Shown here: piece by piece, positions 1-26,029 of the stretch | How the letters are laid out: each line of letters starts with the position of its first letter | How positions within the stretch are numbered: the stretch's first letter is position 1 | DNA from: Magallana gigas | Lineage: Eukaryota | Length of the DNA: 64,000 bases | Reading direction: 5' to 3' | Assembly: GCF_963853765.1 (NCBI RefSeq) | Contig: NC_088854.1 | Location: 44,578,001-44,642,000, forward strand | Made by a program: the position numbers and the translations under genes | The notes under the pieces: generated by a model | The model's database searches: none | Seen by the model: the letters and a program-made list of their open reading frames with translations, nothing else | Told to the model about the DNA's origin: nothing

Positions 1-3000
1 GGGATTTTAAAGATTTTATTTCCCCTACATATTGATGGCAAGTTATCATTACGACATTATGCTGGTCGGCTTGTGAATATACTGGCTTTTATTGGCCAAT
101 TGACATCTATTGCTCTCTTGGTATATTATATATCTTGCTCTAATTCTAGTGTTTCTTTTATTTTAACGCCAATGGTAATTTTGTCCCCCTTCTTAATATC
201 AATGTCGTGGTGGGAAAACTTCGTTTTTAAGAGTAGCATAAAAAGATGTCAAAGTACAATTCAGTGGATGTTTAACTTAAAAAAGAACATGAAAAAAGAG
301 ATAGTGAGGGTTGGAATCATTACTAACATATGGAAATTAATACTGACCTTACTTATCATGCCTGCTCTTTTGTTTGGTACAAGCTGCAAAGACGGGGATG
401 CTTGTATAAGAACAGTTTTCTTTGAATCAAGCGGAAAAGCTGAAATAACTATTGTTTCCTCTAATCTCACATTTGAAGTTATACCCCAATATGAATGTTA
501 TTCATACCTTCCATTTGTAGTATCAGTAATCAACGTTGTTTCCAGTGCAGCTTGCTATAAGTGTGTCAAAGTAGCCAGCAAAATTTTAGCACAACAGTTG
601 TCCTATGCTCTACCTGTTATTATTTCTACCCCAGTTGTAATAGGATTATTTTTGGGGATTTACTCACAATTCATAACTCTAAAAGTAGAAAGAAATGCCG
701 AAACTTGTGTTATTCCTCTACCAGTTTGGTCAAACCAGGATTATGATTTATCAAGCATATTCAATAACATAGAAATTTGCTGGCCTGCTATTTTAGCTGG
801 ACTTTCAGGGTTCATCTCCTTTCTTATTATTTCTAACCATGTATGGTCCTCAGGCAAGGCAAGGTTAATCGCTACTCATCGGTAAGCCTTAGATTATTGG
901 TAAATTACTATATTTAGTGTCATATAAAGTGAGAATGGTGAAATTATATTGATGACAATTATCGCTCACAAATCTTATTTTTGGCAGTATTTTTTCCCGT
1001 GCATTGTATAGTGGTGTGTTTTTGGACCAATCTTTGTTGCTGAATCGAAGACGGGTTGAGGAAGAAAAAAAAAATTATAAAATTGTGAGTTTTATTCCTT
1101 AAAGTAGATCCAGTGTTCTGTGACGTCACACTTTTTTGTAAAACTTTGAATTCTTTAAAAATTGTGCAAGATAGTTTTATTTATTTTATGTGAATATAAT
1201 CACATGGATGTAATTAGAATTATTGGTAGGTTAAAGATATTTTTGCACTTAATTTTATACTAAATTTTCAAATTTTTATATATTTTATCTATGCAAAGGG
1301 GAAATAACTCTATTTCTGACTTTTCTCTCAGTTGTATGTCTAAATGCTATAGTTTTTCTTATTCCAACGATTAATTTTAAAATATTTTTGTAATTTTAGT
1401 TTTCTGATAAAGTTGACATTAAAATTAAACAAGAAAAACACATTTCTGCCTACAAGATTTTACTTTTAACAGAAAAAAATAAATTTTTCTAATGCTAAAA
1501 TATGCTTTAGTTTATGTTTATCTGGCATCTCAAAAAGTGTGATGACATGTATATTTTTTCTAACAATTGATGATATTTAAGTATATTAAGTCGAAATCAG
1601 TTCGGTTTTTCAACTTTCCTCAGAGAATTTTACGAGTATGGAGCTACCTTAAGGTCTAATCTCTTTCTGCTTTTGATTTTACCATACAATTTAAAAAAAA
1701 TCATATTGATTTTCATCAAAACCAATATATACCAATAGATTCGATTCGCTTTGATCCGCATCAATACTCGTATTAAAATAAAATTAAACCGCTCTTGTCC
1801 TTACGTTTTGAAGTATTTTATCACACACAAATGTTAAGCACACTTTGATATTTGTTTTGTTTCATTAATCAACCTCCAAATTAATGTACATAAACTTTTT
1901 CTTAGAGATTGCACAGTACTTCTCATGAAAAATTGAAGAATATAACGACACATCGCACTTTGGCATGTGCCTGCGTATAAACGTCAATTACGTGGTCATT
2001 TTTAAAATGATATTTTATCTTTCACACGAATGTTCAATAAAAAGAGAGGTAATAGAAACATTTTTTGAAATGGTCCCTACTAAAAATTCGATTTTCATGA
2101 TATTTTTTGATTTATTTCAATATATCTTCAGTAACTCTTACTGATTAAAAATTTTCATGAAAATAACTATGGTAGAAATGAATTGGATCCGTTGTCCTTA
2201 TGAGAGTTCAATGCCGTAAAAATATAAAAATACTTTGATAAACAATTTAGAATCAAATTCTTTCATTTTCAAATTATTTGGTCCAAGATTTTCTTATGTT
2301 AAAGCTATACACGCTATAATTTACGTCAATTTTGAATGACAGTGAAAACGCATGTGTTTGTCTACTTATAAAAGTTATCCTTAATCTGTAAATTACAAGG
2401 GTGAATTCCATCTCGTTACAAAGATATAGATTTTTAATTGTTTATTTTCCTGCCAGGAAAATATACCTTTTCATGAATATTGATGAAAGAAGAGCAAACC
2501 GACCTCATTGCGCATGTCCGCGGAGAACTAGGTGGTCGTTATTGTTTGCCTTATTAAATATCCAACTTGATTTTTAATATGCTTAACAGTTGTTAATTTG
2601 AAATACATACATGTAGAATGAGTAAAATACGTTTGTCATTCACAATACCCTTACTTCTGCATTAACACTTATAGGATCTATAAATAGCACATAGGGGAAA
2701 AACACAGGTCTACGTCATTTTTTTAAAGGTAGTATTCATATCTACTCACAGGCTTGTATTTTTTTCTTTTGTTTGTACTCGTATATCGGACAGATTTATG
2801 CTTTACTGAAAATATTCTTTCCTTTGTGAAACTTTCACAATTATGAAGATGTTGACCCTTCACCAGTTTTGGTATGATAGGCTAAATTTAGCTGTCGATA
2901 TCACGTGATAGATTGATATTCACGAGGAGGCATTACTTTCCTGGCAGGAAAATAAATATTTTTTATTGTTTAATATTTGATATATTTGTTACGTGATCGA

Positions 3001-6000
3001 ATTGAGCATTATAATTAACAGAATAAAGATAACTTTTATTAGTAATCAAACACATACATTTTCCCCTTTATTCAAAATTGACGCAAATTATAGCGTGTAT
3101 AGCTTTAATGCAGTTTGTTTAGACAAGTTTTCAGATTTAGGTTAATAAAACTGGAAATTATCAATTTTAATAAAAATGGCTTCAAAGTAAAACTGTTGGA
3201 TAATTTGGCCTAAAAATACTTTCTGATTTTGTCTTTTACACGTTAAACAAAACCTTTTAAATATGTTCCAAATATATCACAGACTAAAAGTGTGCACTTA
3301 TTAAAAATGTAATCAACAAAATTTTTGTAATATACTAGTATTATAATTCCTCTTTACCTTCAGCACTTAAAAAAACAATTCCAACAAATTACTTGTATAT
3401 TGAACATTGATTGATTTTCTTGCTTTAATATACATGTAGTGCTCAGATAAAACGTGGTTGTTATGTGCTGATTCAATTACAAAATCATTATCACTTGAGC
3501 AATTATAATGTGTGCACACTAAACATAAAGCAAGTGACCTTTTGATATTTGTAAGGTGATTAATATATGTTTAATAATGTTTAGGATACAGAAGTTACAT
3601 GAAAAGTGATGTGAATAAGAAATTGGCCTAAGTTTCGATAAACATGTTTAATTTATATATCGTGTACATTAAATCCTTACACAGAAAGATAAGAAGAAAC
3701 TTCAAATGCCTGATGAAAATGACGAGCAGAATAACAGCTGGTCAAAACTTAGGGAAGACGATACGCCTTTGATATACATGTGTGCAACAATGTGGCATGA
3801 ATCAGAGGTTGAAATGGTGCAGATACTCAAATCAATCTTCAGGTAGTCCATTTATCGTTAAGATTGAAACTATTGTTAAATGGTTGCTCATAACCACCAT
3901 TCAGTAACGGTATTTTCAATTTATTGCAGACAAGACTATGACCAATGTGCGAGAAAACATGTGCAGCTTGGCCTTGGGATAGAGGATCCTGATTATTACG
4001 AATTTGAAGGTAATGAAGTTATGACATGTCTTCTAATTGCCATATTTAAATCGAACATTATTGATGTACTTTTAAACTGGCAACTGGCAACATAGTAACC
4101 AACAAATTACCATTATCAAATAGAGCGTACATTTTCAGCTCATATTTTCTTTGATGACGCCTTTGAATCCCAAAAGGACATCAATGGAACATACAAAGTC
4201 AACAGCTATGTTAAACAACTTATTTCATCAGTTGAAACTGCAGCAAGGTAATAAATAGGATAATTGATTGTAATGGAAATTCTTTTGTATTCTTATTAGC
4301 TCTATTCATGTTTACACTTTAAAAGTTTAATATCCCTTTTACATTTTATCTAATTTGGATTTCAGAGTAAAGTGTACATTTTAAGTCGCTATAAAACGAA
4401 AAAGATATGAAGTCAGGACTTCTGGTTCTGGTTTTAACTAAGACAAAGGTTTTGAGATTTTAAGATTCTAACTCGTCGACTAATTACTGATTAATTGAAA
4501 TGTTGTGTTAACCAAAACAGATTATTTAAAAACCATAGTACCAATCGTAAATCTTATTATGCAATAAAAGTAGATGCTAAGAATATCTGAATATTGATGT
4601 AGATATAATCATCATAATAAATGTATTATTAAATTATTAGTAAGGGTTAACACAAACGCTGTTTCTGATCAAGATTTGTCGGTTGTCTGCCGTTGCAGTC
4701 GTTTTTGTAAACTTTTCACATTTCTTTTTTCTCCTTAAGAACCATCGGGCCGATTTTAACCAAAGTTGGCAAAAAGCATCATTGGATATTGGATGAAGGA
4801 AATTCATTTTTTTTCAAATGAAGGGATACATGGAGATTATTTATAATTATTGAAAATTTGTGGGTATTTTTCAAAAATCTTCAAATAAACCATTTCACAA
4901 GAGCTGAAACTTGGGTGGAAGTATCCCCGGCTAGTGTGCATTCAAATGGTCCCAGGTAAGGGGTCACAATGGGCGAATATAGTTTTACTTAGAAATATAC
5001 GAATCTTTAAAAATCTTCTTCTTAAAAACTGTTTTGGCCAGAAAAGCTGTAACTTGTATGAAAGCATCATGTGGTAGCGTAGATTCACTTTTAATCATGA
5101 TCACTGGGGTGGAGTGGGACCACAACTAATGGGGGTCAATTTTTTACATCAATGGAAATTACAAAGTCAACAGCTACGTTAAACAACTTATTTCATCAGT
5201 TGAAACTGCAGCAAGGTAATAAATAGGATAATTGATTGTAATGGAAATTCTTTTGTATTCTTATTAACTCTATTCATGTTTACACTTTAAAAGTTTAATA
5301 TCCCTTTTACATTTTATCTAATTTGGATTTCAGAGTCAAGTGTAAATTTAAAGTCGCTATAAAATGAAAAAAGATATGAAATCAGGACTTCTGGTTCTGG
5401 TTTTAACCAAGACAAAGGTTTTGAGATTTTAAGATTCTAACTCGTCGACTAATTACTGATTAATTGAAATGTTGTGTTAACCAAAACAGATTATTTAAAA
5501 ACCATAGTACCAATCGTAAATCTTATTATGCAATAAAAGTAGATGCTAAGAATATCTGAATATTGATGTAGATATAATCATCATAATAAATGTATTATTA
5601 AATTATTAGTTAAGGTTAACACAAACGCTGTTTCTGATCAAGATTTGTCGGTTGTCTGCCGTTGCAGTCGTTTTTGTAAACTTTTCACATTTCTTTTTTC
5701 TCCTCAAGAACCATCGGGCCGATTTTAACCAAAGTTGGCAAAAAGCATCATTGGATATTGGATGAAGGAAATTCATTTTTTTTTCAAATGAAGGAATACA
5801 AGGAGATTATTTATAATTATTGAAAATTTGTGGGTATTTTTCAAAAATCTTCAAATAAACCATTTCACCAGAGCTGAAACTTGGGTGGAAGTATCCCCGG
5901 GTAGTGTGCATTCAAATGGTCCCAGGTAAGGGGTCACAATGGGCGAATGTAGTTTTACTTAGGAATATACGAATCTTTAAAAATCTTCTTCTTAAAAACT

Positions 6001-6753
6001 GTTTTGGCCAGAAAAGCTGTAACTTGTATGAAAGCATCATGTGGTTGCGTAGATTCACTTTTAATCATGATCACTGGGGTGGAGTGGGACCACAACTAAT
6101 GGGGGTCAATTTTTTACATAGGAATATTTAGAGAAAATCTTTAACAATCTTCCTCTCAAACCCATAATAGAAAGGAAAGCATCCTCATGTAATGCAAATT
6201 CAAGTCTGATCAAATTATGATTCCCAGAGGTAAGGTTTAGTCACAATTGTGGGGGGGAAAGGGGTGGTGTTGGGTCAAATTTTTACCCAAGGAAGATAAA
6301 ATGAAAAGTCTTTGAAATCCTCTGGAAAAACATTCAACCAATAAAAGCTGAACCTTGTTTGTAAACACAGATTGTGCGGACTGAAAGTTGATCAAATCAT
6401 GATTTCCTGCGAGTAGGAGTGGAAGCACAAGGGGGAGGATAAAATTTCAAAGAAATAACTTCTTACAAATACTAAAACAACAAAAGGTGCCAAATATTAA
6501 CCATAAAAATATGTGGATAAATATCGGATGATTTTTTATGTGCAATATCTACTGTACTAAATTGTCAAAATATTTTGAATTTGATACTGTTTTGCTGATT
6601 TCATAAGCTATTGTTGCTCAGGTAAGCAATGTGACCGCATTTCTCCCCCCAACAATTCAGACTTTGATATGTATTAAACAAGATGTGGAAACCGTGTTGA
6701 ATTAAATGTTTGGTTCGTTGTTTGTCACCGTGACTCGGTTTATATGATGAGAA

Positions 6754-6829
<76 letters not shown>

Positions 6830-9800
6830 CAAACATTTTTAAACAAACCAAATAAGGATCCTGCCATGCAGAAAAAACATCTTTCAGCAATGCTAATTTA
6901 TATTACAATACTTTCATAATTTTGTATTGAACTTTATTTTCATCACAGACACGTCAAGTACACAATAAAAACAATTTTTTTGTTGGATTTGATCTAGATC
7001 TGTAGCAGGAATATCAAAAGCAATTGTTCGAACAAACACGCCTTATGGAGGTAGATTAGAATGGCGACTTCCGGGTGAAAACAAACTGATTGCCCATCTC
7101 AAAGACAAAACTAAAATCAGACATCGTAAAAGATGGAGTCAGGTAATAGCTTTACATAATATGCACGTTCAAATAATTTCCAAAAGTAGAGGTTACATTT
7201 ATAAACAAGTAACTTACATTTCAACAAAATATTATGCTCCAGCTTTAAAATTTTTAAAAGTGAAGTATTTATTCACTAGTATGGAGCATAAAAATATAAT
7301 AAGTAAATAAAATGGCATACATTGTGTTCCAAATTGATTGTAGGTTATGTATATGTATTATTTCTTGGCACACAAGCTGGCTAAAAAGAGAAAAGTTGCT
7401 GAAAACACATTTTTGCTTGCTTTGGACGGCGACGTCGATTTTCAGCCCAAAGCTGTCCAACTGTTGGTGGACAGGATGCGAAAGAACCCAAATCTCGGTG
7501 CCGCGTGTGGTCGAATCCATCCAATCGGAACGGGTAAATTTGGCATTTTACTGTTTTCAAGACGGTTCAAGATTTTTATATATGTCATATTATGTTTTTT
7601 TTATTTTACAAGGTCCAATGGTTTGGTACCAACAGTTTGAATATGCTGTGAGTCACTGGCTGCAGAAAGCAGCGGAAAACATAATGGGATGTGTGCTTTG
7701 TAGTCCGGGATGTTTTAGTTTGTTCAGAGGTTCTGCGCTTATGGATGACAACGTCATGGCCAAGTATACTACACTTCCAACTGAACCCCGTCATTATGTC
7801 CAGTACGACCAAGGTCTATACTTAAAAACATCAGCCGTTCGTTTTTATTATAACATTATTTTTGAAATTCCCATTTCTTATTTTGTGAAATATTTAAAGA
7901 AGCAATGGATATTTGTCGAATTTTGCAGGTGAAGATCGATGGCTTTGCACGTTACTGCTACAACAAGGCTACAAAGTCGAGTATGTGGCTGCCAGCGATG
8001 CCCTGACCTATGCTCCTGAAGGTTTCTATGAATTCTACAATCAGCGAAGGAGGTGGTCTCCATCAACCATGGCTAATATCATAGATCTCTTAATGGACTG
8101 GAGGAATGTTACCCAAAAAAACGAAGACATAACTAAGATTTACATCCTGTATCAAATGTTTTTGATGATTTGCTCCATTCTGACTCCGGGCACAATTTTT
8201 CTAATGATTCTTGGTGCAATAAGTATGGCTTTTCCGACTATTCCTCCATTCGCAGGGATGTTAGTCAATCTTATACCTGTGAGTGGAATGATTATATTGT
8301 GTTTCGTTGCCAAACCAAATATACAGGTAAAACTGCTGTAGTGCTATATTTTAGGATATATAATTTAAATTTCTATATGTTTATTTATTTGGATTCAATT
8401 TTACTCCAAATTTACAGTTAGCGTATGCTGCTGTTGTCTCCATTTTCTACTCTCTGCTTATGATGGTTGTTCTCGTGGGTATACTACTGGAAGCGGTTAC
8501 AGCCGGATTGTGTTCAGTCACAACACTGTTTCTTTTGTTTGTCGTCGGAGTTTTCTTCATTTCGGCAGTACTCCNNNNNNNNNNNNNNNNNNNNNNNNNN
8601 NNNNNNNNNNNNNNNNNNNNNNNNNNNNNNNNNNNNNNNNNNNNNNNNNNNNNNNNNNNNNNNNNNNNNNNNNNNNNNNNNNNNNNNNNNNNNNNNNNNN
8701 NNNNNNNNNATTGTGTTTTGCATGGGTTTCTGTATTTCCTTTCCATTCCATCGATGTCCATGCTGTTAATGATTTATTCCCTTGGAAACCTACACGTAAT
8801 ATCCTGGGGAACACGAGACACAAAAAAGACTGCGCCACAACTAGAAACCAATGATAGAATGCCTTCCAGATCTCCGAGTTTCTTAAAATCATTTGGTTTT
8901 AATGGTGATGAGGAATCTGAATATTTGTTTACGTGTGGAAAGTTTATAAGGTAATGTTCATTTATACTTAAGTTGTATTTTACGTTTCCAAATAAAAACA
9001 TTGACATAATAAATTGAAAGGATAAATACGCATATAAATAGTAAATAAGCTAACTGCATAACTGGTCACTAACTTCTGTTTAGTTTTTAAGAACAATTAT
9101 TTTTTTATGAACGTATAACTGATATATTGTGGGACATAATCTTTAATGCTAATATTGACTGTTTGCTTCTGTTAATTTTTTTAGATGTTGTCCTATAAGA
9201 CCGATAAGAATGATTCTAGAAAGACTCGATAACCTAGGAGCGCAGAGAATAAAAACAACAGTAGAATCTGAACCCAGTGAGATAAAACTGGACGAAAATG
9301 CTTATATCTCAACTCTAAATGTCCAAATTGATGACACCGCAGAGAAAAGTATGTTTAATAGTCAATGATATTGCAACTAGTCGTCAAAATCAGGTTTTTG
9401 TTTGTCAAATAAGATTATTAAATGTGCTACAGGTAATCCTTTATTCAAAGAAGACAACGAATTCGAACACGAACAAATGAGTTCTCAGTCATGGATGGAC
9501 GACAGCGATCTAAAACAGGGATCTGTTGCTGTACTGGACAATGATGAAACACTATTTTGGGAAGAATTTATTTCGAAGTACTTGAAGCCACTTTACACCG
9601 ATAAAGAACACGAAGAACAGGTACTTGGTTTGTTGACGATTTTGTTAGCTCACCTGAAAAAATATCTTTAAGAACTTTAACCGAAATGTCCGTCCATCTT
9701 GTACATATGTGAACCAAAAATGTTAACATTTTTAAATTGGCTTGTTAAAGAGGCTGAGTGGTGAACAAATTAACTATCAAATCTATTTAACTTTGAAATA

Positions 9801-12301
9801 TGATGTTTAGGACCATAACCTATCATTTAATAAAGAAAAAATCCAAATAGTTTAGCTTTAAGATTTTAACATTTTCCTATATCTTTCTACAGAGCTCTTT
9901 GTATAATGGGGGAAACATAGCCTAAAAATGGCCACGACCAGCCAGCTCTCTTAATGCCAAAAACTTAACAAAACTCTTTTTATATATATAAAAAGCAACA
10001 GATATAAGGTTTTACATTATGTTGTGTTGTACAGTACGGCGCATCTTATCCAAAAAACCGACTTTAAAAAAATTTCCGATCGGAATCGGTATTTTTGTAC
10101 TACTCATGAATGTATAAACTTTCAGAAAATTACTAATTTCTCAATAAAATAAATCTAATTATTTCATTAAAATGATTAATTACCTATAACCCATAGATAT
10201 TTACATCACAACGTGTTACGGTGTTCAGCCTTCTATACTATTATGCATGCGTATTTACTGTAAACAAAATACATGCAGGGCTCGCGAAGATTTTCCTGGA
10301 CATGTTTGTTGATAGAAATATGTACTTCTCCCAGGTAATAAATGTTTAAAGTTTTTAAATAACCACAATTATTATTTTGTAAGCATGTATTTTGCGTGAT
10401 AATCACAAGGTTTGCTAAAACCTAAATTCATTTTTGTAAGTGAGGCCCCCTGAGGGGTTGTTTGACATATTTATGACATATGTAGGTTCATTTTAAAATG
10501 AACCGAAATGAGTAAACCATTAATAAATTATCGAGAAAGTGATGATGTGTTCCGTTTAGAGAGTCCCTTTTACCTCGTATACCATGATTACTGTAGTCAA
10601 ACGAAGATCTTAAAGTTTTCAGTACGTGTCAATTCACGTGGTACAAAAAAACGATATAAGATTATTCCGTTTTGTACGACCTTTAAATTTCCGGAAACTC
10701 ATAATTACGTTACTTAGGTGTGTGAAAGGGATTTTTATGTATTTCAACAATTATAATCAACGTTATTTCTAATTTCCTAATGATACAATAGGTAAATCTG
10801 AATTTATTCACACATGTGTTTTCAGCTGTATTGTCTCTTAAAAGAATATGACACCCTATTTTGAGACAAAGCTAGAACCAAAATGTGCAATTTTTCCCTC
10901 AACATGGTTGTAGAGTGGACACCAAAGAATATCTTTTATATTTTTCAAGATTTTTAGATATAATGTTTAAGTCTGTCACTGTGCAGTTCTTAGTGATTAA
11001 AAAGGCATTATCTTGTACTTGTGTGCACGACAAGACATAGTTAACATCATGTAAAACCTCCTAGTTTGTTTCTTTATCTTTTAGAAACAATTTTGGTTAG
11101 TGTTTGGCTTTAACAAGCCAGTTTAAGAAATTTTTACAATTATGGTCCTAATATGTACAAGATAAACCGAAATCTCACTTAAACACTAATTTGTATTTTG
11201 TTAAAGTCTTGTTCTTTTTTCTGATTTGTTTTCAATATTAATATTATTCTTCATTTACAGATGCGCCAAGGTCTAAAAGAACTTAGAAACAAAGTGTGCC
11301 TCGCTTTTCTGTTAATGAATGCACTCTTCGTTACCATTGTTTACGTCTTAACAGAGGTTAACGCAAGTTTTAACCATGCACTTTCCATAAAACTTCCGTG
11401 TACTGTCTCAGAAGGACCACCTGGTCGAGGATATATAGAACCAATATCAATCGCCTTTACAGCAATATTTGGAATCATGTTATTTTTGCAATTTATATGT
11501 ATGCTTATGCATCGAATGTCGACATTAGTCCACATTGTTGCTTCAGTTAAGTTGGATTGGAAAAGGAAATTAGTTGCTGTTAATAATAAAGACCAGCCAG
11601 ACAATGTCGAAGTCGAAGTCGAAGATGGCTTGGAACTTGTTAAGGGACTTCAAGCCGTAAAGGAAGATGATACAATATCTATTGCCTCAACGGATACAAC
11701 GTACAGTGTTGAGTCTTATGTGCGCCCTAAACAGAAGAGCAAAATTATGTGGAAAAAATACCAAAAGCGATTGAAAAAACAAACACAACAACAACATGAC
11801 TACTGTTTACAATTTACAAACAACTTAAACAAATTCACCGAAGCATTAGAAAAAAATGATAACAAAAGCGTTAAAAAATTGTTAGAAAATAAAGTGAAGG
11901 GAAAAACGATAGCAGCAGTTAGTTCAATGCTAAAAAATGAAACAAAAATGAACGAAATCAAAATACGAGCAACGGCTCTTAATAAAAAGGAAGTTGTTAA
12001 AAGACGTTGGCAAGATTTTGGAGCAAAACTTGGGCTAAATAAAGAAGATGAAAATGATAAAAATCCCGGTAAGTTTTTCAAGGATGTCACCAAAGCTGCT
12101 TTAGCCCAAGACAGAAGGAAACGTTTAGAAGAGGGCGAGATTTCCTTAGGCGAAACAAATGTGAATAAGATAAAAAGAGAAACATCTGAGAGTAGGAGGG
12201 ACATTCCGCTTGATATTATGAAGAGGGGGACTGACGAAAAAAACTCGATTCCAAATGTTCAAAAGGAGCAAATTACATCTGTTAAAACAACCGAGTTTTA
12301 A
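1..12301 (+). CDS. CHS: Chitin synthase (GT2, metazoan type), tandem paralog 1; 5' end lies outside the window
   Basis: Exons with GT-AG boundaries and consistent phases: <1-881, 988-1084, 3685-3842, 3930-4009, 4139-4247, 6998-7142, 7344-7533, 7613-7813, 7929-8326, 8418-(gap at 8575), (gap to 8709)-8950, 9185-9348, 9433-9620, 11261-12301. Motifs CATMWHE, IRHRKRWSQ, LDGDVD, CSPGCFSLFR, QYDQGEDRW, QRRRW and SWGTRD are present. Intron positions and phases match paralog 2. No stop or frameshift in the visible exons; one intron and its exon edges are hidden in the N gap. Confidence 0.93.
1103..1648. mobile_element. TTAA-flanked non-autonomous TIR element (Kolobok-like)
   Basis: TTAA|AGTAGATCCA at the left end and TGGAGCTACC|TTAA at the right end form imperfect TIRs with purine-purine termini. 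Confidence 0.55.
2303..3104. mobile_element. TTAA-flanked MITE with ~160-bp imperfect inverted arms (Kolobok-like)
   Basis: TTAA|AGCTATACACGCTATAATTT ... AAATTATAGCGTGTATAGCT|TTAA. The arms stay alignable inward to TTTTCCTGCCAGGAAA / TTTCCTGGCAGGAAAA. Confidence 0.8.
4178..6119 (+). repeat. Near-identical ~970-bp tandem duplication
   Basis: Unit 1 is 4178-5145 and unit 2 is 5146-6115, with ACAT microhomology at the junctions. Each unit carries the 3' half of a CHS exon, its donor and part of a HINE-like element. Confidence 0.9.
5620..6640 (+). mobile_element. Helentron/HINE-like non-autonomous element with degenerate satellite-like internal repeats
   Basis: Starts TTTCTGATCAAGATTTGTCGGTTGTCTG...GTAAACTTTTCACATT, contains degenerate repeats (AACCAAAGTTGGC, CTGAAACTTGGGTGGAAG) and ends GCTCAGGTAAGCAATGTGACC. 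A 5' partial copy lies at about 4650-5145. Family assignment is from recalled oyster repeat architecture, not a database search. Confidence 0.6.
6758..6826. repeat. (TA)n microsatellite
   Basis: Perfect TA run. Confidence 0.98.
8575..8709. other. Assembly gap (135 N) inside CHS paralog 1
   Basis: N run at the position of the (TATC)n-containing intron of paralog 2. Confidence 0.99.
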
Positions 12302-13154: not shown

Positions 13155-13320
13155 AAACTTCTATGACGTCACCCATTGTATTTAGTCAACGTTTATTTTC
13201 ACTATTCAACCAGCAGGTGTTGGATATATAATTAAAAAACTTCTATGACGTCACCCATTGTATTTCGTCAACGTTTATTTTTACTATTCAACCAACAGTC
13301 GTTGGATATATAAATATCCT
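13155..13320. repeat. 82-bp tandem duplication, each unit containing TGACGTCA
   Basis: AAACTTCTATGACGTCACCCATTGTATTT...GTTGGATATATAA occurs twice with an 82-nt period. Confidence 0.85.
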
Positions 13321-14023: not shown

Positions 14024-14150
14024 AGTAAGATAAATAACTCGATAGTGTTGAATAGTTTAGAGAAAACATCCCCTCCTCGGGCCTTCGGCCCTCGGAGGGA
14101 ATGTTTTCTCTAAACTATTCAACACTACCTCGTTATTTATCCATTACATA
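14024..14150. mobile_element. Short fold-back (palindromic) element
   Basis: Arms of about 45 bp (GATAAATAAC...GAGAAAACAT / ATGTTTTCTC...GTTATTTATC) around a GC-rich core CCTCGGGCCTTCGGCCCTCGG. Confidence 0.7.
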
Positions 14151-15819
14151 ATTCCTGCAATTCTATCAGATGTATTTAATTTGTTTACTTGACTTTTATA
14201 CTTTATTATATAATTTAACAAAGGCTTAAACAATGGCTGACTAATAATACATGTTTGAGTGATGAACTTCTGTTTGTTTGGTTGTTTGTTATTTTCTTGT
14301 CCTCAAAATTGCTCTTAAAGCGAAATACCGTCATAAACCCTTCGACTTCGTTACATCCGATTGCAAACATGTATCCAACGTGTAGAATTCTTTTCGTGGT
14401 CTTTTAGATTTTATACATTTATTTAATATTGATTTTAATTTGTATGTGCATATTCTGTTTGTAAATAATGCATTGATCTGTTTATTTGATGATAGTATTA
14501 TTCTGGTTTTAAAACAGTACGTAAAATTTGATAATTTTATCGCGACCGAGAAACACAGTGAGGCAAGATGTACGTCGACACAGGTGGAAATACTTTTTAT
14601 TAACTCTTTAAAATAAAATGTTAGTGTAGTGAAATTGCCTTTTACTTTTTTAATATATGCATATACTCACTTTAAATCTTCTGTTCATTTCGTCATTGAT
14701 ATTGTTTAACTTAGTAAATCATTTGCAATTCGTACAAAAGGTTAATTTAAATTTTTTAAAATACTGTTAGGATATCGTCACTTCCTTTGACAACCAGCAA
14801 CAATCCGAAACCTCTTGATCGAAACAAAACCAAACTGAAAGTGTTTAAAATATATCAAGCAAAGGTCTAATTCTCGGGTCGCAACCAGATGTCAGGATCG
14901 CCCTATTATTCTTAACATCTTGAGATTAAGGTGGAAATTAGCCACCCCGAGGGCAAAACAAGTGAATGTGCTTATTATATAAAATAGATACATTGTAGAA
15001 CTTTGGTTCAGTGTATTGTAACGGCGTAACTCATTTGATGAAAATATCAGCTGGTCATGACATATGTATACAAGTCATGAGTTGGCTAAGCTCAATTGGG
15101 GCTTTTAAATCTTTTAAATATTTTGGAATTCTTTGAGTATAATTTTGGTCCAACAATTTTCTTAACAAGTTTATAATAGCTCTGCGGATACACACGGCTA
15201 CTACATATCTTAAAACCGACCGCCTTTGACGGCCAGTAATTAATATTTTTTAATCATAAGATACAAAGCTATGCAAAGAATAACTCGAATAAATGTAAAT
15301 TGATAATTTTAACCATATATATCTTGATTTTCCCTTTTTTTAATTTGGAAGTATTTTTACGTCCAAAAATATCCAAAAAAAACTTTCCATTTTTTACCCG
15401 TGGTCGGAAACTATTAGAAAAACTGTTTGTCATTGATCTGGTCTGAAAAGTTTACTGGTAACAGTGACCCGAGTCTTGTTTACTCGAAACAAAAACTATA
15501 TGACACTGATATCATTAAATAAGCAGTCTCAAGTATCCTTATATTTTAATTGACCAAACAGATAGCAGAGATATATAGTTGATCTATTTATCTTTGATTT
15601 GACTTATCAAAAATTTACAAATTGAATAAATATACACGTATATCACGCTGATTTTAAAATCACTGTGCACATAAACCAATAGAGGAAAGATCACCTTGCA
15701 TGTATATATACTTAAGTGTTATCTGAAAAATTTGTAAACAGGAGTGGGTACAGTGTACACGGAAGAGGGCACTCTGTATCAACCTGTTTTGATTTATCAG
15801 TATCAAAAGCATTTATCGT

Positions 15820-15880
15820 AAAAACTCAACCTAGTTACTTGGACTTCATGCATTGTAGAGCAGGCTTTCTGTGACTCAAG
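15820..15880 (+). other. Probable 5' UTR exon of chitin synthase paralog 2 (start approximate)
   Basis: Strong donor CAAG|GTAAGG at 15880/15881 pairs with acceptor TTCAG| at 16255, 4 nt before the ATG. The frame running into that ATG has a TAA at 15819-15821 and no ATG after it. Confidence 0.45.
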
Positions 15881-16259
15881 GTAAGGGTGATTTTTGAAAA
15901 TAAAACTAACGACATGACACTTATTTTTCAACAAGCAAATATACATTTATATATTAAGTGTAAGTTTTCACTTTATCTAGTTAAATTTTCACTAGCGTCA
16001 TGACTTACTTTATGTTAAAGTTTATATAAAGATATTTATCGAATCATAAGACATAATTGATGATTATATCAATCGAAGAATAAAAATTATTATGTTTACA
16101 AACATCACATATAGTTTACATAATTGGAAAACATCTTGTATAATGAATTTTATAATGTATCAAAATAAGAAATTCTCGAAAAATACGTAAACAAAAAACA
16201 GTATATTAGTTAGAAATTTACTTATATATGCAAATGTCTAATTTTTGGTATTCAGTAAG

Positions 16260-19200
16260 ATGGAAATGGCATCATACCCTGGAGGATCAGTGCTTAGAAC
16301 GAAAGAAACAGAAATGATGCAAGGTTAGCTCATTTTTCTCATTTAAAAAACCTTTTTATGTGAACGGTTACAATTTGATACTGTCTCATATACAGATTAC
16401 TTCTGATCCGTATATATCCAAATGTTAAATTACGTTTATAATCGTATATAACATGTTAAAAAATGAAACGTTTAACATGCAATTGACATTTATTGATACA
16501 TTTATTTGTAAAAATGTCCATACATGTGCTTAGAAACGAAAAGGGTATCAATGAAGGTTACAAAATGATACTAGTCACCTTAAAATTAATCGTAAAAAAA
16601 CAAATGTTTAACATGCAATTGCCATTTATTGATAGGGGTGAAAATGTCCATAAATTCAATTAGCAACGAAATGGACATTGGCGGACAGAGGAACCAAGCT
16701 TATGAGGAAGATTCCTGCGACTCGATTGATTCTGCAAGTGACGATACAGACACAGAATCATCCGCTGCAGATGGTTATAGTATAGAGGAAACAAAAGAAG
16801 TCCAGTACCGCCAAACAGAACCTTCATTTAAATCACCAAATCAAGAAAGGTCTGCACTAAAGCTTATATTAGTTTCTTTAAAAATTATATTTTTAAATAT
16901 GTTTACACACATAACACATATTGTACTTCATTAAATTTATGTTTCAGGTCTGAAGCCAAGTCCTGGGATGTTTTCCGAGTAACTTCAGAAGATAATGTGT
17001 CGAGCTCTTCTATTGCATGTTGGAACGCTTGTTTTCTAATCAGCAGAATAATGTTCTCTTCTCTTCTCTTTATGTTGGTGTTTTCAACGTCAATTATATC
17101 GAAAATGACATTTCTGTTTATGACGGCCAATATATTTCCTTCTACAACCGAAAAAAATCTGAAGACTTTAAACGGAACTTTGTCGTATACTTTAAACGCT
17201 ACTGATGTGAGATGGATTTGGGGAATTCTTATTACCATTACAGCTCCCTATATGTTTACCATACTCAAATATTTGTGGGTGCTGATGTTACAGAGAACCT
17301 GGCCTATGCAGTGGAATACCTTTATAGTGGTATATTTTTTTTACAACTGAAAACGGACTGAGTTTTAAAATATAATTTCTATTTTTCAACACAGTTTCAT
17401 ATTTGGAATACAATTTAAGTTTTCTCTTTTTTTCAGGCACTTATCCTTGAATCACTTCATTCTGTAGGATTGTGCGTTTTTGTTCTAGTAGTGCTACCAA
17501 GTTTTGATCCGTTGACAGCGTGTGCCGTTTCTTTCTGTATATGCCCAATACCTGGGATACTAAAGATTGTATTTCCTTTAAGAGAACACGACGACAAAAG
17601 CAAGTTGCCAACACGTATCCATGTTGCTCGCGTTTTGAATATACTGGCTTTTGCTGGTCAGATAGCATCAATTTGTCTCTGGGCCTACTATATTTATTGC
17701 TCCAAAACCAGCAACTCTCTCGTTCTCATATCACTAGTGATTTTATCTCCATTTTTAATATCAATTTCATGGTGGGAAAACTTCATTCCGCAGTCTAGTA
17801 CAGAGAGGCTTAAAACTTCTTTAAGATACACTAAAACTGAAAGTAATGTTCCATGGGTTTTTCGCTTCAAAAAGAAAATGAGGAGGGAGAAAGTGAGAAT
17901 TGGTATCATAACCAACTTATGGAAGATAATATTGACACTTCTTGTCATGCCTGCTCTCTTATTTGGTGCAAGTTGCAAGGACGGGGATGCTTGCATTAAA
18001 ACCATTTTCTTCGAGTCAACCGAGAAAGCTGAATTGAACATTGTTTATACAAATCTCACATTTGAAACTCCTCAAAAAGATAGCTGCTATTCTTACCTTC
18101 CATTTGTTGTAGCAATCATTAACGTAATGTCCAGCGTGATTTGCTATAAATGTGCCAAATCAGCCAGCAAAATCCTTGCACAAAAATTGTCGTATGCGGT
18201 TCCGGTTGTGTTATCTACGCCGGTTGTTATTGGTTTATTTTGGGGAATATATTCAGAGTTTATAACTCTGAAAATCGCAACAGATGCTCAAACTTGTGCC
18301 ATTCCTTTGCCAGTTTGGGCAAGTAAAAACTATGATCCATCTTCAATGTTCAAGAATATCCAGTTCTCTTGGTCTGCTGTTTTAGCTGGGCTCTTTGGAT
18401 TCTTCTCCTTTTTGATGATTTCTAATCATATATGGTCACCAGACAAGGAACGATTAATTGCTACTGACCGGTAAGTCTGACATATTGAGATAAACTATTA
18501 CAGTAAGTATTCTATAATTGTGAGAATAATGTAAATGTTTTTTCTTACAGTCTTTTTGTCCGCTCATTGTATGATGGAGTGTTCCCGGATCAGTCTCTGT
18601 TTTTGAATAGAAGGAGGATTGTTAAGGAAACAAAAACAGAAAAACATGTGAGTTAAACACCGCATAAGAACATTTCAAGCTTCAAAAATTTTTCACTTTT
18701 TAAATGCATATATGTGCATTGCTTTTACAGAAAGAAATCAAAGAGCTTCCAATACCTAATGATACTGACGAAAATTCACAAAATAAAGAGTGGTCCGAAC
18801 TTAGGGAGGATGATACACCGATGATATATATGTGTGCAACAATGTGGCATGAATCAGAGGTTGAAATGGTGCAGATACTCAAGTCTATATTCAGGTAAAA
18901 CATCCATTGAAATGATTGATATTTTAGTTATATGTGATTTACAAAACAGAATACTCATAGCAACTATTTTCAATGTTTTACAGACAAGATTATGACCAAT
19001 GCGCTAGGAGAAATTTGCAATTAGGTCTTGGGGTTAAAGATCCTGATTACTATGAATTCGAAGGTATTGTTGATATAACAACTTTGTTAAATAGGCTTTC
19101 AGTTAAGAAAAAACGAGTAGTAGGTTCCGACACCTTCTTAAATTAATACGAAAAAAAGATTTCAAAGATTTAAATGTCCTTTTTAGCACATATTTTCTTT

Positions 19201-21629
19201 GATGACGCCTTTGAATCCCGACAAGACAGCAATGGAATATACAAAGTCAACAGCTATGTTAAACAACTTATCACATCAGTAGAAACTGCAGCAAGGTATT
19301 TGTTTTATATTTATTTCTTATCACAATGGCATTAGACTCATCATTATTTGTTGACAACCAATTTTAGACGGTTAAACCATGAAATACGAAAAGTATTGTC
19401 AAAATAAGAACAAAACATATAAATCCTCAAAACTTTTCTGTTAAAGTTTAAAAATTAATGCCCAAATATATTGTCAACTGATATTATTAAAACCACAGTT
19501 TAATGCAACATTTGTAGATAGATTGTTTTAAAATAAAGTTTTTAGGTTAATCCCTTTCTAGTGTAGCACACATCAACTGAATATTCAGAATCGTTACGTA
19601 ATTAGGGGACATGGTAATAATTGGCGTTGACCAAAAAACGCTATATTTTACTTTTTTAAGCTACGGTAACACCTTACATATTTTACTGATGACAAATCCA
19701 AAAAGATAATTTAGGAATAGAACATTGCTTTACATGTATATATTACATTTAATCTCCTTTGTTCTTGTGTAGATCTGTACCAGGAATATCAAAGACAATT
19801 GATTCACCTGTTCGAACAAACACGCCTTATGGAGGTAGATTAGAATGGCGACTTCCGGGTGAAAACAAACTGATTGCCCATCTCAAAGACAAAACTAAAA
19901 TCAGACATCGTAAAAGATGGAGTCAGGTAAAACATAGCAATATACTAGTACTAGCACAAGTTCTGCTGTAACAACTTTAACATGCAATTGGATTAAAATT
20001 GATAATTAGTGAAAATATTTTGAAGAGTTTTGTCGCTTCATTTATAGTGATTTAAAAATTTTAGTATTCATAGAGTGACAGTGAGAAACAAAGAAAAGTC
20101 AAACAAAAAGAGAGCAGCTGGATGGTCGGGGTTAATTTAAGACCGAATTGATCTTCTTTAGGAGAAGATTTCTGTTTAAAGATAAAGGAAAATTCTTCAA
20201 TTCAAACGCTTGAATTTATGGGATTTTTCTTCACTAAATAATAAGTTATAGGCTCCCATCATATCTTAAACTTTAGGATTTATCTAATGGGCAATTTGTT
20301 TACCAACCAGCCTCCTTAAATCTTATTTAGATAATTTCGCGTTTACAATTTTGTAGGTGATGTACATGTATTATTTTTTGGCGCATAAACTGGCAAAACT
20401 TCCTGGAAAGTCGCGGCGTCAAAAGCGAACAATTGCTGAAAACACATTCTTACTGGCACTGGACGGCGACGTCGATTTTCAACCTAATGCTGTTCAACTG
20501 TTGGTCGACAGGATGCGAAAGAACCCTAACGTCGGTGCCGCGTGTGGCCGAATCCATCCTATCGGATCGGGTAATATTCCTTTTCTATCACTTAACAATA
20601 TACCACATAGAAGTGTGAATCGTTAGTAATATTCTGTTGTTATAAATTTAAAAAGGTCCAATGGTTTGGTACCAACAATTCGAATATGCTGTTAGTCACT
20701 GGCTGCAGAAAGCAGCGGAGAACATAATGGGATGTGTGCTTTGTAGTCCGGGGTGTTTTAGTTTGTTCAGAGGTTCTGCGCTTATGGATGACAACGTCAT
20801 GGCCAAGTATACAAAAGTTCCAACTGAGCCGCATCATTATGTCCAGTACGATCAAGGTATAAATTAAAAACTTGTATTTTAAGGAATTGTTGTACCAATA
20901 ATTGACTTAGTTTAGGACATTTTTGCTCATATATTTTACTTTCTCAGGAGAAGACCGATGGCTTTGCACATTGATGTTACAACAAGGTTACAAAGTCGAG
21001 TATGTGGCTGCCAGTGATGCACTGACCTATGCTCCGGAAACTTTCAATGAATTCTACAATCAGCGAAGGAGGTGGTCTCCGTCAACCATGGCTAATATCA
21101 TAGATCTCTTAATGGACTGGAGGAATGTTACCCGAAAAAACGAAGACATAACTAAGATTTACATCTTGTATCAAATGTTTTTGATGATTTGTTCGATTCT
21201 GACTCCGGGTACAATTTTCCTAATGGTTCTTGGTGCAATAAGCATGGCTTTTCCGGCTATTCCTCCATTCGCAGGGATGATAGTAAATCTTATACCGGTG
21301 ATTGGAATGATTATATTGTGTTTTGTTGCCAAATCAAGCACACAGGTAAAAATACATTGTAATACTATGGTGCTGATTTTTAATAACAGATGTACATTTG
21401 TTCACTAATGGTTGTTTTATTTCCTTAAAGTTGGCTTATGCCGCTGTTGTGTCCACCTTCTACTCTCTTCTGATGATGGTTGTTCTTGTTGGTATACTAC
21501 TGGAGGCTGTTACAGCCGGAGTATGTTCCGTCACAACACTGTTTCTTTTGTTTGTCGTTGGAGTTTTCTTCGTTTCGGCAGTTATCCATCCACAGGTAAC
21601 AATTATCTATTTATCCATCTACTACCTAC

Positions 21630-21694
<65 letters not shown>

Positions 21695-24415
21695 ATTTCA
21701 TATTTGTCTTCTTTTGTACAGGAGTTTTATTGTGTTTTGCATGGGTTTTTGTATTTCCTTTCCATTCCGTCCATGTCCATGCTGTTAATGATTTATTCCC
21801 TTGGAAATTTGCATGTGGTATCCTGGGGAACACGGGAAACTAAAGAAACACCGACACAACAAACAAACCAAGCTACAACTACAAAATCAGCCAGATCATC
21901 GACGTTATTAGACTCGTTTGGTCTTGGTGAAGAGAAATCTGAATATTTGTTATCATGTGGAAAATTTATTAGGTATGGTTGAATTGGATTAATTTATAAT
22001 CATAATACAGCTTACTGATACAGTGTGTTTGTTCTTTATTTTTTTTTAGAAAGCGGCTTTGATTTCATATTGATTATCACATATTTGATAAATTGTAAGT
22101 GTTATTTGAAACCTTAAAGATGTTGTCCAGTAAAGAGAACAGACGACAGACCATTCAGAATTATACTGGAGAGACTTGACGGCATAGAAGCTCAAATAAT
22201 GAAAGATACAGAGGAGTATAAACCAGAGGAACAGAAAGAGGAAGAAAATGTTCATTTTTCAAGTCTAAGCGACATGATTGATGGACATATAGAACGAAGT
22301 ATGCATCATTTATAGACATAATTATTGAGAATAGTTTCTATAGCAACTGAACTTGTTTAACACATTTTAATGTGTTTCAGGCAATCCATTATTTAACGAC
22401 GAAGAGCACAAGCACATGATGAATTCTCAGACATGGATGGACGACAACGATCTAAAAAGGGGATCTGTTGCTGTACTGGACAATGAAGAAAAACTCTTTT
22501 GGGAAGAATTCATACCAAAGTATTTGAAGCCACTAGATACCGATAAAGAACATGAAAAACAGGTATTTGTTTTTGTTGACGCTTTTGTTAGCTTACCTGA
22601 GTATGACATTCTCGGGTGAATTTCGGCGTTCATCAGCATAGGTTAGGAAAAGAGGAAAATAAAGAAAATACCTCTAAAGATGTTATTTCTAAAATTGGAT
22701 TGGAAGAACAGAGGTAGGGATGGGGATCGGTGAAAAAGAAAAATTAATTTGAGGAAAAAATATGAAGAGAAAGTAGTATGAAACATTTTTTCTTTAAAAA
22801 AGATGTAATCCTGAGAGTCATAAAGAGGTCATACGTGGGGAAGTCCCATTTCACATTAGAAAAACCTAGAAAAAAATCATAGAGGCAGATATCTGTTAAA
22901 TTTAACGGATTGCATTCTACTTCTGGAAATGAATTCAAATATAAACAAATGGAATCAGAAAGAACTACTTTTGATCGGAAGGGACATCTTCAACGTAGAA
23001 TCACATATTAAAAAAGTCACAAAAAGTTAATAAATGCTCTAATCAAAGAATCTATATTAAAAATTGCTAAAAAAAAAAAACCAGGCTTCAATTTTCTTCA
23101 TACTAAAATCTTTTAAGGTCAGAGATAGGCAACTATTTACAAGAATATAATCGTACTAATTTGATTTTCAGTGTTCTTCACATTTTTTGTCTATTTTCAG
23201 ATGCACCAAGGTTTGATTGAACTTAGGAACAAAGTTTGTCTCGCTTTCCTGTTGATGAACGCACTCTTTGTTACAATTGTTTACGTCTTAACAGAAGTGA
23301 ATGCAAATACTAAACATGCACTTTCCGTTAAACTGCCCTGCACTGTCTCAGAGGGGCCACCTGGTCGAGGATATATAGAACCAATATCATTCGCTTTTAC
23401 GGCAATATTTGGAATCATGTTATTCTTGCAATTCATTTGCATGCTTATGCATCGAATGTCGACATTTGTTCACATTGTTGCTTCAAACAAGTTGGACTGG
23501 AAAAGGAAACTAATTGCTGGGATAACTGCTCAGACTGAAGTTCCAACTGACATTGGAGTCGAAGATGGGTTGGAAATTGTTAAAGGACTTCAAGCCGTGA
23601 AGGAAGACGATACAATATCTATTGCTTCAGTGGATACCACCTTCAGTGAAGATTCCTATAAACGTACGGAAAACAAGAGCAGAGACATGTGGAAAAGATA
23701 CACTAAGCGACTGAGGGAACAAACACAACAACAAACACAACCACAAGAATTACGTGTACAATTTGCAAAGAATTTGTCTAAATTTACCAAAGCTTTAGAA
23801 GAAGGGGATGACGCGAGCACACGGGGAATGCAAGAGGAAAATAATGCTGTTCTTTATGAACAGAAAATATCTGGGGTTAAACGGCTTCTAAAAGATAGAT
23901 TTAATAGAAAAACACTTGCCGCGGTCAGAACGATTGCTGAAAATCAACAAAGAACTAGTGAGATAAAAAGAAGAGCAACAGCTCTGAATAGAAAGAGAAT
24001 TGTTCAAAGTCGTTGGCAAGCCATTGAAGAGAAAATAAGACTAACCCAAGAAATTGATAAAGGTGTTACTAGTTATCCCGATAGGCCTACTAAAGTTGGT
24101 TTCGCGGCAGTGACCAAAGCTGCTTTGGCCCAGGAGAAAAGGAGACGCCTTGAGGAGGGAGAAGAAGTCCAAGAAACAAGCATCAGTGAAACCACATTCA
24201 AGAAACCGTACAAAAAATTAGACCATGATGAGAAAGATAATAATGAACAAAGTGAGGACAACACGCAACGTCAACCTGATCCTGAAAATCAAAGAGAAAT
24301 TTTGTTAGACATTGAAGAGAAGGGGACTGATGAAGAAGACTCAATTTCAAATTCCCAGAAGAAAGAAGAAAGTAAGGATGAGCAAGATGCATCCGTCGAA
24401 GTAACTAATTTTTAA
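16260..24415 (+). CDS. CHS: Chitin synthase (GT2, metazoan type), tandem paralog 2; complete, about 1700 aa, no myosin motor domain
   Basis: 17 exons: 16260-16323, 16636-16849, 16948-17329, 17437-18470, 18551-18647, 18731-18894, 18984-19063, 19187-19295, 19773-19926, 20357-20570, 20656-20856, 20948-21345, 21431-21595, 21722-21972, 22120-22298, 22381-22562, 23201-24415. Total 5103 nt = 1700 aa plus stop, phases consistent throughout. N-terminal WDVFR, multiple TM segments, CATMWHE, LDGD, EDR, QRRRW, SWGTRE. The first two coding exons are the least certain. Confidence 0.93.
20110..20319. mobile_element. Degenerate Kolobok-like MITE in CHS paralog 2 intron 9
   Basis: Right end CAACCAGCCTCC|TTAA and left relic CAGCTGGATGGTC match the termini of the element at 42402-42628. 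Confidence 0.45.
21604..21694 (+). repeat. (TATC)n microsatellite in the 126-nt intron 13 of CHS paralog 2
   Basis: Pure TATC run from about 21631 to 21694, with degenerate units upstream. Confidence 0.97.

Positions 24416-26027: not shown

Positions 26028-26029
<2 letters not shown>

What the first reader, a model, noticed from the sequence alone, without database searches (positions are those of the whole stretch)
1..24415. Tandem pair (possibly part of a larger array) of diverged chitin synthases, at least one without a myosin head
Seen: two head-to-tail CHS genes with identical intron positions and phases but divergent TM exons and C-terminal tails. Paralog 2 begins at ATG 16260, only ~4 kb after the paralog 1 stop, and that interval has no myosin-like ORF or exon series. 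Established: the classic bivalve shell chitin synthases (Atrina/Mytilus type) carry an N-terminal myosin motor domain. Inference: this is a locally expanded, myosin-less CHS clade that may be sub-functionalised between tissues (mantle, gut, larval shell). The N-terminus of paralog 1 and any further copies lie upstream of the window.
Basis: partly seen in the sequence, partly recalled or inferred. Interest (0 to 1): 0.7.

Follow-up and report, generated by a model that had tools for sequence, protein, structure and literature searches.

The report
Tandem myosin-less oyster chitin synthases
Two neighbouring, intact chitin synthase genes in an oyster genome lack the myosin motor of the classic shell enzymes, but such motor-less, tandemly duplicated copies are already described in molluscs, so this is ordinary.

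Summary
The window (G000:C2:44578001-44642000) carries two head-to-tail chitin synthase (CHS) genes on the + strand. Paralog 1 (P1) starts about 1 kb upstream of the window and stops at 12301. Paralog 2 (P2) runs from ATG 16260 to the stop at 24415: 17 exons, 1,700 codons, no internal stops. All 15 comparable introns share position and phase. Protein identity is 73.5% overall, 92-96% in catalytic exons and 51-76% in the N-terminal/TM exons and tail.

Nothing splices in from further upstream. No myosin-type exon lies anywhere in 224 kb around the pair, although the same search recovers the myosin exons of this genome's fusion genes.

The N gap at 8575-8709 lies where P2 has a 126-nt intron holding a (TATC)23 microsatellite. 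It hides both splice sites of that P1 intron. The flanking frames are open and compatible.

The pair belongs to a four-gene cluster. Genome-wide only 3 of about 21 CHS loci are myosin-linked. Tissue sub-functionalisation was not tested.

The parts
1..12301 (+). Paralog 1 (P1) gene body inside the window. Exons 2-3 and the start of exon 4 lie upstream at window coordinates -943..-682, -591..-210 and -116..0 (G000:C2:44577057-44578000). The stop codon is 12299-12301 and the protein ends ...TTEF.
1..881 (+). P1 exon 4, the part inside the window (N-terminal multi-TM block)
   Evidence: 68% aa identity to P2 exon 4
988..1084 (+). P1 exon 5 (97 nt, the same length as in P2)
3685..4247 (+). P1 exons 6-8 (3685-3842, 3930-4009, 4139-4247), including the CATMWHE motif region
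4178..6115 (+). Tandem duplication of about 969 bp (96-99% identical copies) starting inside P1 exon 8 and filling part of intron 8. It duplicates the last ~70 nt of exon 8 and its donor site (second copy from 5146).
6998..8574 (+). P1 exons 9-13 (6998-7142, 7344-7533, 7613-7813, 7929-8326, 8418-8574, the last running into the gap): catalytic domain with DGD, GEDRW and QRRRW
8575..8709 (.). Assembly gap (135 N). It covers the end of P1 exon 13, all of intron 13 and the start of exon 14. Not filled.
8710..12301 (+). P1 exons 14-17 (8710-8950, 9185-9348, 9433-9620, 11261-12301): SWGTRD motif, last TM helices and a K/E-rich tail
12302..16247 (.). Interval between the P1 stop and the start of P2 exon 1. 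It holds no myosin-like or CHS-like exon, only short repeat-like RNA contigs at 13.1-14.7 kb.
16223..16228 (+). TATA-like element about 25 nt upstream of where the RNA contigs begin; an in-frame TAA lies at 16239-16241
   Evidence: sequence; contig starts at 16248 and 16254
16248..16323 (+). P2 exon 1 (5' UTR plus ATG 16260 and 21 codons; donor in phase 1)
   Evidence: joint 16323|16636 in runs X2 and X6; a matching loose end in X11
16636..18470 (+). P2 exons 2-4 (16636-16849 acidic N-terminus, 16948-17329, 17437-18470): N-terminal TM block with a PF23000 match
   Evidence: (introns 16850-16947 and 17330-17436 in four runs)
18551..19926 (+). P2 exons 5-9 (18551-18647, 18731-18894, 18984-19063, 19187-19295, 19773-19926)
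   Evidence: The exon 5 start is confirmed by the RNA loose end behind 18470.
20357..21595 (+). P2 exons 10-13 (20357-20570, 20656-20856, 20948-21345, 21431-21595): catalytic core with DGD, GEDRW and QRRRW
21596..21721 (+). P2 intron 13 (phase 0) with a (TATC)23 microsatellite at 21604-21694; the counterpart of the P1 gap
21722..24415 (+). P2 exons 14-17 (21722-21972, 22120-22298, 22381-22562, 23201-24415): SWGTRE motif, last TM helices and a charged tail ending ...VTNF; stop codon at 24413-24415

Best explanation
P1 and P2 are two intact, tandemly duplicated metazoan type II chitin synthase genes of an oyster. They belong to a four-gene, same-strand CHS cluster spanning about 160 kb on contig C2. 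Each encodes a roughly 1,600-1,700-aa membrane enzyme with five parts: a short acidic N-terminus, an N-terminal multi-TM block, a cytosolic GT2 catalytic domain, a second TM block carrying the SWGTR(E/D) motif, and a long charged cytosolic tail ending in T-x-F. Neither gene has a myosin motor. P2's mRNA starts at a short first exon about 4 kb after the P1 stop. By inference from the family, both enzymes polymerise UDP-GlcNAc into chitin and extrude it through the membrane, as arthropod CHS does, without a built-in link to actin. The duplication is old (dS about 0.7) and both copies are under purifying selection. Change is concentrated in the N-terminus, TM loops and tail, which suggests divergence in regulation or localisation rather than in catalysis. 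Shown here: gene structure, motifs, transcription and the 5' end of P2, absence of myosin exons, and cluster context. Inferred: enzymatic activity, the function of P1, and any division of labour between tissues.
For: Pfam PF03142 matches the catalytic exons of both genes and PF23000 matches exon 4. P2 has a complete 1,700-codon ORF; P1 is open on both sides of the gap; both carry CATMWHE, DGD, GEDRW, QRRRW and SWGTR(E/D). All 15 comparable introns have the same position and phase. RNA contigs from four studies give GT-AG joints for P2 introns 1-3 and the intron 4 donor, and the loose end behind 18470 matches the predicted exon 5 start. No joint enters exon 1 from upstream. A TATA-like element and an in-frame stop precede the ATG. 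ORF pieces from the two in-genome myosin-CHS loci find no myosin exon in 224 kb around the pair, while they do find each other's myosin exons at E 1e-10 to 1e-21. Genome-wide profile and protein searches put no myosin head on C2 between 44.5 and 44.7 Mb. dN/dS is 0.23 overall and 0.11 in the core. The other cluster members, U and D, were mapped. The unrooted tree gives ((P1,P2),U) 100%, then D, then the two myosin-linked loci together at 99%.
Against: P1's transcription was not tested, its first exon was not located, and two of its splice sites are hidden in the gap, so its integrity is not fully shown. RNA evidence comes from assembled contigs, which cannot prove a transcription start site or exclude rare isoforms. 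Only P2 introns 1-4 have RNA support; the remaining junctions rest on homology and consensus splice sites. No enzyme assay exists. The tree has no outgroup.
Confidence: 0.9

Rival explanations
1. P2, P1 or both are really myosin-CHS fusions whose motor exons lie far upstream and are spliced onto the exons seen here.
For: P1 exon 2 and P2 exon 2 both begin at a phase-1 acceptor, so an upstream exon exists. For P1 that exon was not found. Contigs cannot prove a transcription start.
Against: P2's upstream exon is a 76-nt first exon with its own ATG, a preceding in-frame stop and a TATA-like element, and no contig continues upstream. No myosin-like exon was found in the 80 kb upstream of the window, inside it, or in the 80 kb downstream, with a working positive control. 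Genome-wide myosin searches give nothing on C2 at 44.5-44.7 Mb. Copy U occupies the DNA about 27 kb upstream of P1.
Confidence: 0.03
2. One copy, most plausibly P1, is a decaying or silent pseudogene rather than a working enzyme.
For: P1 expression was not tested and its first exon was not located. The gap hides two splice sites and about 15 coding nt. A recent 969-bp tandem duplication copies part of exon 8 and its donor into intron 8.
Against: About 1,600 visible codons have no stop. All catalytic motifs are intact. Every visible splice site is canonical and matches P2. dN/dS is 0.23 at dS about 0.7, which is not what neutral decay gives.
Confidence: 0.08
3. The two copies are an assembly or haplotype artefact of a single gene.
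For: Assembly gaps lie inside and beside the pair, at 8575-8709 and 25296-25430.
Against: The copies differ at 26.5% of residues, with dS about 0.7 and unalignable long introns. A third copy, U, is more distant still. Several genome-type runs hold 95-100% of the P2 words.
Confidence: 0.01

Closest known systems
Lophotrochozoan chitin synthases not linked to a myosin domain ('group D' of Zakrzewski et al. 2014, PMC3942024)
   Same: They are type II metazoan CHS without a myosin motor domain, occur as several paralogs per genome, and are tandemly repeated in Lottia (CS7-8). Here there is a four-gene tandem cluster with no myosin exons.
   Different: Placement of these genes in group D was not tested against reference sequences. 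A secondary loss of the motor within groups B or C, also described in that paper, is not excluded.
Myosin-linked bivalve shell chitin synthases (Atrina rigida / Mytilus / Pinctada type; Weiss et al. 2006 as cited in PMC3942024 and PMC5379566)
   Same: They share the catalytic core and signature motifs (52-62% aa identity to this genome's own myosin-linked loci on C5 and C6) and the general TM-catalytic-TM layout.
   Different: P1 and P2 have no N-terminal myosin head. Their N-terminal TM block is only 23-37% identical to the myosin-linked copies, and the two myosin-linked loci group apart from them in the tree.
Arthropod chitin synthases (for example insect CHS-1/kkv and CHS-2)
   Same: They have the same domain order without a motor and the same motifs (CATMWHE, EDR, QRRRW, SWGTR). 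Gene duplicates are used in different tissues (cuticle versus gut), as stated in PMC3942024.
   Different: They belong to a different lineage. P1 and P2 also have an acidic N-terminal segment and a 300-400-aa K/E-rich tail ending in T-x-F. No direct sequence comparison with insect proteins was run here.

Membership tests
Chitin synthase, GT2 (Pfam Chitin_synth_2, PF03142; metazoan type II) | Profile match to PF03142 above the curated cut-off | tested here: met
   exons 11 and 12 of P2 score 36.6 and 45.6 bits and exon 12 of P1 scores 41.3 bits, against a cut-off of 27. One search gives the same places genome-wide.
Chitin synthase, GT2 (Pfam Chitin_synth_2, PF03142; metazoan type II) | Catalytic motifs of processive GT2 enzymes (DGD, (G)EDR, Q(R/Q)RRW) and the CHS-specific CATMWHE and SWGTR(E/D) | tested here: met
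   all are present once in both spliced models, in the expected order.
Chitin synthase, GT2 (Pfam Chitin_synth_2, PF03142; metazoan type II) | Multi-pass membrane topology on both sides of the catalytic domain | tested here: met
   PF23000 matches exon 4 at 24.5 bits (cut-off 23.5); hydropathy peaks cluster at roughly aa 120-530, 970-1100 and 1300-1360. This is a crude Kyte-Doolittle scan, not a topology predictor.
Chitin synthase, GT2 (Pfam Chitin_synth_2, PF03142; metazoan type II) | Chitin-polymerising activity | not testable with these tools
   Needs an enzyme assay or genetics.
Myosin-linked lophotrochozoan CHS (groups A-C; Atrina/Mytilus type) | N-terminal myosin motor domain (PF00063) encoded in the same transcript | tested here: not met
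   no myosin head on C2 at 44.5-44.7 Mb; no myosin exon in 224 kb, with a positive control. P2's mRNA begins at a short exon at about 16248; no P2 exon matches a myosin family.
Myosin-linked lophotrochozoan CHS (groups A-C; Atrina/Mytilus type) | Phylogenetic placement inside groups A-C (which would imply secondary loss of the motor) | tested here: inconclusive
   the two in-genome myosin-linked loci group together (99%) apart from P1, P2 and U. The tree has six taxa, no outgroup and no reference sequences.
Unlinked lophotrochozoan CHS (group D) | Clusters with reference group D sequences (for example Lottia CS7-8) | not tested
   Reference full-length proteins could not be reached. Spliced models may not be sent to the search tools, single-exon queries are limited to hits of 0.55-1.75 times their length, and the large search was reserved by the operators for other cases.

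The most novel reading that the evidence does not exclude
The U/P1/P2 lineage may descend from a myosin-linked ancestor by secondary loss of the motor, with a mini first exon and an acidic N-terminus taking its place. The diverged charged tails with a C-terminal T-x-F (class I PDZ-type) motif may then provide an alternative cortical anchor that directs each paralog to a different secretory surface.
Probability: 0.12. Interest if true: 0.4.

Novelty: already known. Interest (0 to 1): 0.15.

Why it matters
Chitin frameworks underlie mollusc shell, radula and gut linings, and oysters carry about 20 CHS genes. Knowing which copies have a built-in actin motor and which do not matters for assigning them to shell, larval shell or gut. 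This locus supplies clean models for two motor-less copies, including an RNA-supported 5' end, and shows they sit in a four-gene array. It confirms published knowledge rather than extending it: unlinked CHS and their tandem duplication in lophotrochozoans were described in 2014 (PMC3942024).

Tried and rejected
Only six loci already held could be used.
2. The ESM Atlas look-up of the exon 4 protein gave best scores of 0.83-0.84 to unnamed clusters, which is uninformative.
3. A PDB sequence search with the QRRRW exon found no hit at E <= 0.001.
4. P1's first exon could not be located. It has no similarity to P2 exon 1 or its promoter, and only one weak ATG/donor candidate turned up.
5. Side lead: the stand-alone myosin at C5:15.45 Mb, the best non-self match of the CHS-type motor exon, might have been the 'myosin with Expansion-type MH2 tail' noted earlier in this scan. 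No PF03166 match lies near it, so no link could be made.
6. The hits of C5 intronic ORFs at -26 kb, 62 kb and 66 kb were considered as possible myosin exons. They were rejected because they come from non-myosin parts of the C5 locus and occur on both strands in several places, which marks them as dispersed repeats.
7. Joined (spliced) protein models were built only inside local scripts, for ORF, motif, identity, dN/dS and tree work.
8. The large protein-representative search was not used, because the family was not in doubt.
Full report
WHERE THE WINDOW LIES
The window is G000:C2:44578001-44642000, + strand, in a 564-Mb assembly with ten chromosome-sized contigs. RNA runs that hold the sequence are labelled 'oyster metagenome'.

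THE OBSERVATION
ORF listing and self-comparison show two collinear series of coding blocks on the + strand, at about 1-12301 and 16260-24415. Exon nucleotide identity is 71-92%. The blocks match Pfam Chitin_synth_2 above its cut-off.

I used blocks conserved among four copies on this contig as anchors and resolved GT-AG junctions with frame and homology constraints.
- P2 has 17 exons and a 5,103-nt ORF of 1,700 codons with no internal stop.
- P1 has the same structure and is open on both sides of the gap, with 1,601 codons visible.
- All 15 introns that can be compared have the same position and phase. Exon lengths are identical or differ by whole codons.
- Protein identity is 73.5% overall.

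| Region | aa identity P1 vs P2 |
|---|---|
| Catalytic exons 9-13 | 92-96% |
| Acidic N-terminal exon | 51% |
| TM exons | 59-76% |
| Last exon (tail) | 64% |

THE GAP
The 135 N at 8575-8709 do not interrupt continuous coding sequence. By alignment of the flanks the gap lies where P2 has intron 13 (21596-21721, phase 0). That intron is 126 nt long and consists mostly of a (TATC)23 microsatellite, which is a plausible reason for the assembly break.

The gap hides the end of P1 exon 13, the whole intron, the start of exon 14 and both splice sites. That amounts to about 15 coding nt if the lengths equal those of P2. The left flank ends 1 nt into a codon and the right flank begins with 2 nt that complete a codon. 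The frame is therefore kept whether read straight across the gap or with a phase-0 intron as in P2.

THE 5' ENDS
Contigs of four RNA-type runs from four studies were laid on 12481-18480.
- They show GT-AG joints at 16324-16635 (two runs), 16850-16947 (four runs) and 17330-17436 (four runs).
- In all four runs a loose end behind 18470 matches the predicted start of exon 5 at 18551 with one mismatch.
- No contig or joint enters exon 1 from upstream.
- A TATA-like element (16223-16228) lies about 25 nt before the contig starts, and an in-frame TAA (16239-16241) precedes the ATG.

Contigs cannot prove a transcription start, but everything fits a promoter about 3.9 kb after the P1 stop.

P1's exons 2 and 3 and the start of exon 4 lie at window coordinates -943 to 0, so its N-terminus is just outside the window. 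P1 exon 2 begins at a strong acceptor in the same phase as P2's. A short upstream exon is therefore expected, but I could not locate it.

NO MYOSIN HEAD
This genome has true myosin-CHS fusions. Myosin_head matches lie directly upstream of CHS matches at C6:46.56-46.58 Mb, C5:7.54-7.57 Mb and C5:7.59-7.62 Mb.

I cut all + strand ORF pieces from two of these loci and searched them against 224 kb of C2, meaning 80 kb on each side of the window plus the window itself. Only the CHS parts matched, and they matched in four places.

A more sensitive run on the critical intervals gave nothing beyond dispersed intronic repeats and noise. Those intervals were the end of U to P1 exon 2 (27 kb), the P1 stop to the P2 ATG (4 kb), upstream of U (43 kb), and the P2 stop to D (94 kb). 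The same queries recover each other's myosin exons at E 1e-10 to 1e-21. No P2 exon matches a myosin family in Pfam.

CONTEXT
The pair is the middle of a cluster of four same-strand CHS genes:
- copy U at about -36.7 to -27.1 kb
- P1
- P2
- copy D at about +118 to +124 kb

There is also a 59-aa relic of exon 4 at -22.2 kb.

Genome-wide, the QRRRW exon of P2 finds about 21 CHS loci plus weaker ones. It is 92% identical to P1, 86% to U, 60-62% to D and to a second trio at C2:38.0 Mb, and 50-66% to the rest. Only three loci have a myosin head upstream. Lack of a motor is the rule here, not the exception.

EVOLUTION
Core identity (aa 560-1180 of P2) is 84% for P1-P2, 74-76% to U, 63-66% to D, and 52-62% to the two myosin-linked loci.

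An ML tree on 447 shared columns gives ((P1,P2),U) at 100% support. D branches next, and the two myosin-linked loci group together at 99%. The tree is unrooted and has six taxa. It therefore cannot say whether the cluster was never linked to a motor or lost one.

Nei-Gojobori estimates for P1 versus P2:

| Region | dS | dN/dS |
|---|---|---|
| All | 0.71 | 0.23 |
| Catalytic core | 0.40 | 0.11 |
| N-terminal TM block | about 1.0 | 0.20 |
| Tail | about 1.0 | 0.37 |

Both copies have been kept by selection since an old duplication. They are far too different to be alleles or an assembly artefact.

LIKELY FUNCTION
Both models carry CATMWHE, DGD, GEDRW, QRRRW and SWGTR(E/D) in the expected order. 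They also have a PF23000-type N-terminal TM block and hydrophobic clusters on both sides of the catalytic domain.

By inference from the family, they are processive UDP-GlcNAc transferases that extrude chitin across the plasma membrane. Without a motor they resemble arthropod CHS in layout. Where they act must be set by promoter use and by the diverged N-terminus and the 300-400-aa K/E-rich tail. The tail ends in TEF in P1 and TNF in P2, and D ends in THL but U in VLF. The PDZ-type reading of that motif was noted by another reader and is untested.

COMPARISON WITH WHAT IS KNOWN
- Zakrzewski et al. 2014 (PMC3942024) report that nearly all lophotrochozoans have several copies of both myosin-linked CHS (groups A-C, with secondary losses in B and C) and unlinked CHS (group D). 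They also report that Lottia CS2-4 and CS7-8 are tandem repeats.
- Pinctada has 14 genes with the PF03142 domain, and the paper singles out one as having a myosin head (PMC6231486).
- CHS counts with and without the myosin head, including Pacific oyster genes, are given in PMC4595640.

A tandem array of unlinked CHS in an oyster is therefore an instance of published knowledge.

LIMITS
- Only P2 introns 1-4 have RNA support.
Public annotation of these exact genes and their placement among reference groups A-D therefore remain unchecked.

Noticed in passing
window:4178-6115: A ~969-bp tandem duplication (copies 96-99% identical) begins inside P1 exon 8 and repeats its last ~70 nt plus the donor site within intron 8. 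It is either a recent event or an assembly artefact, and it could create an alternative donor.
   Followed up: partly
window:1099-1500: A ~400-bp element in P1 intron 5 has at least 40 copies at 95-99% identity on all large contigs. It is probably a young dispersed repeat.
   Followed up: no
window:30594-37632 (- strand): ORF pieces with a Thioredoxin domain (30594-30869) and a DnaJ domain (37375-37632) on the minus strand point to a DnaJ/thioredoxin (ERdj5/DNAJC10-like) gene downstream of P2.
   Followed up: no
G000:C2:44555784-44555960 (window coordinates -22217..-22041): An isolated 59-aa fragment is 76% identical to the start of copy U's exon 4. It is a relic of a partial CHS duplication between U and P1.
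   Followed up: partly
window:20357-21595 versus 7344-8574: Synonymous divergence in the catalytic core (dS 0.40) is less than half that of the flanking regions (about 1.0). This could reflect past gene conversion between the tandem copies or constraint at the nucleotide level.
   Followed up: no
window:13081-14680: Short, high-depth, rearranged RNA contigs with non-canonical joints lie in the P1-P2 intergenic interval. They look like transcribed repeats rather than exons of either gene.
   Followed up: no
G000:C5:15449772-15452191 (- strand): A stand-alone myosin locus has a motor exon that is the closest non-self match (48%) to the CHS-linked motor of C6, closer than the other CHS-linked motors. 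No CHS or MH2 match lies beside it.
   Followed up: partly
window:25296-25430 and 6752-6845 / 26006-26096: A second 135-N assembly gap lies just downstream of P2. Long (TA)n-type simple repeats occur in P1 intron 8 and at 26.0 kb.
   Followed up: no
window:12290-12301 and 24404-24415: The C-termini are T-E-F (P1) and T-N-F (P2). Copy D ends T-H-L but copy U ends V-L-F, so the class I PDZ-type ending is not shared by the whole cluster.
   Followed up: partly
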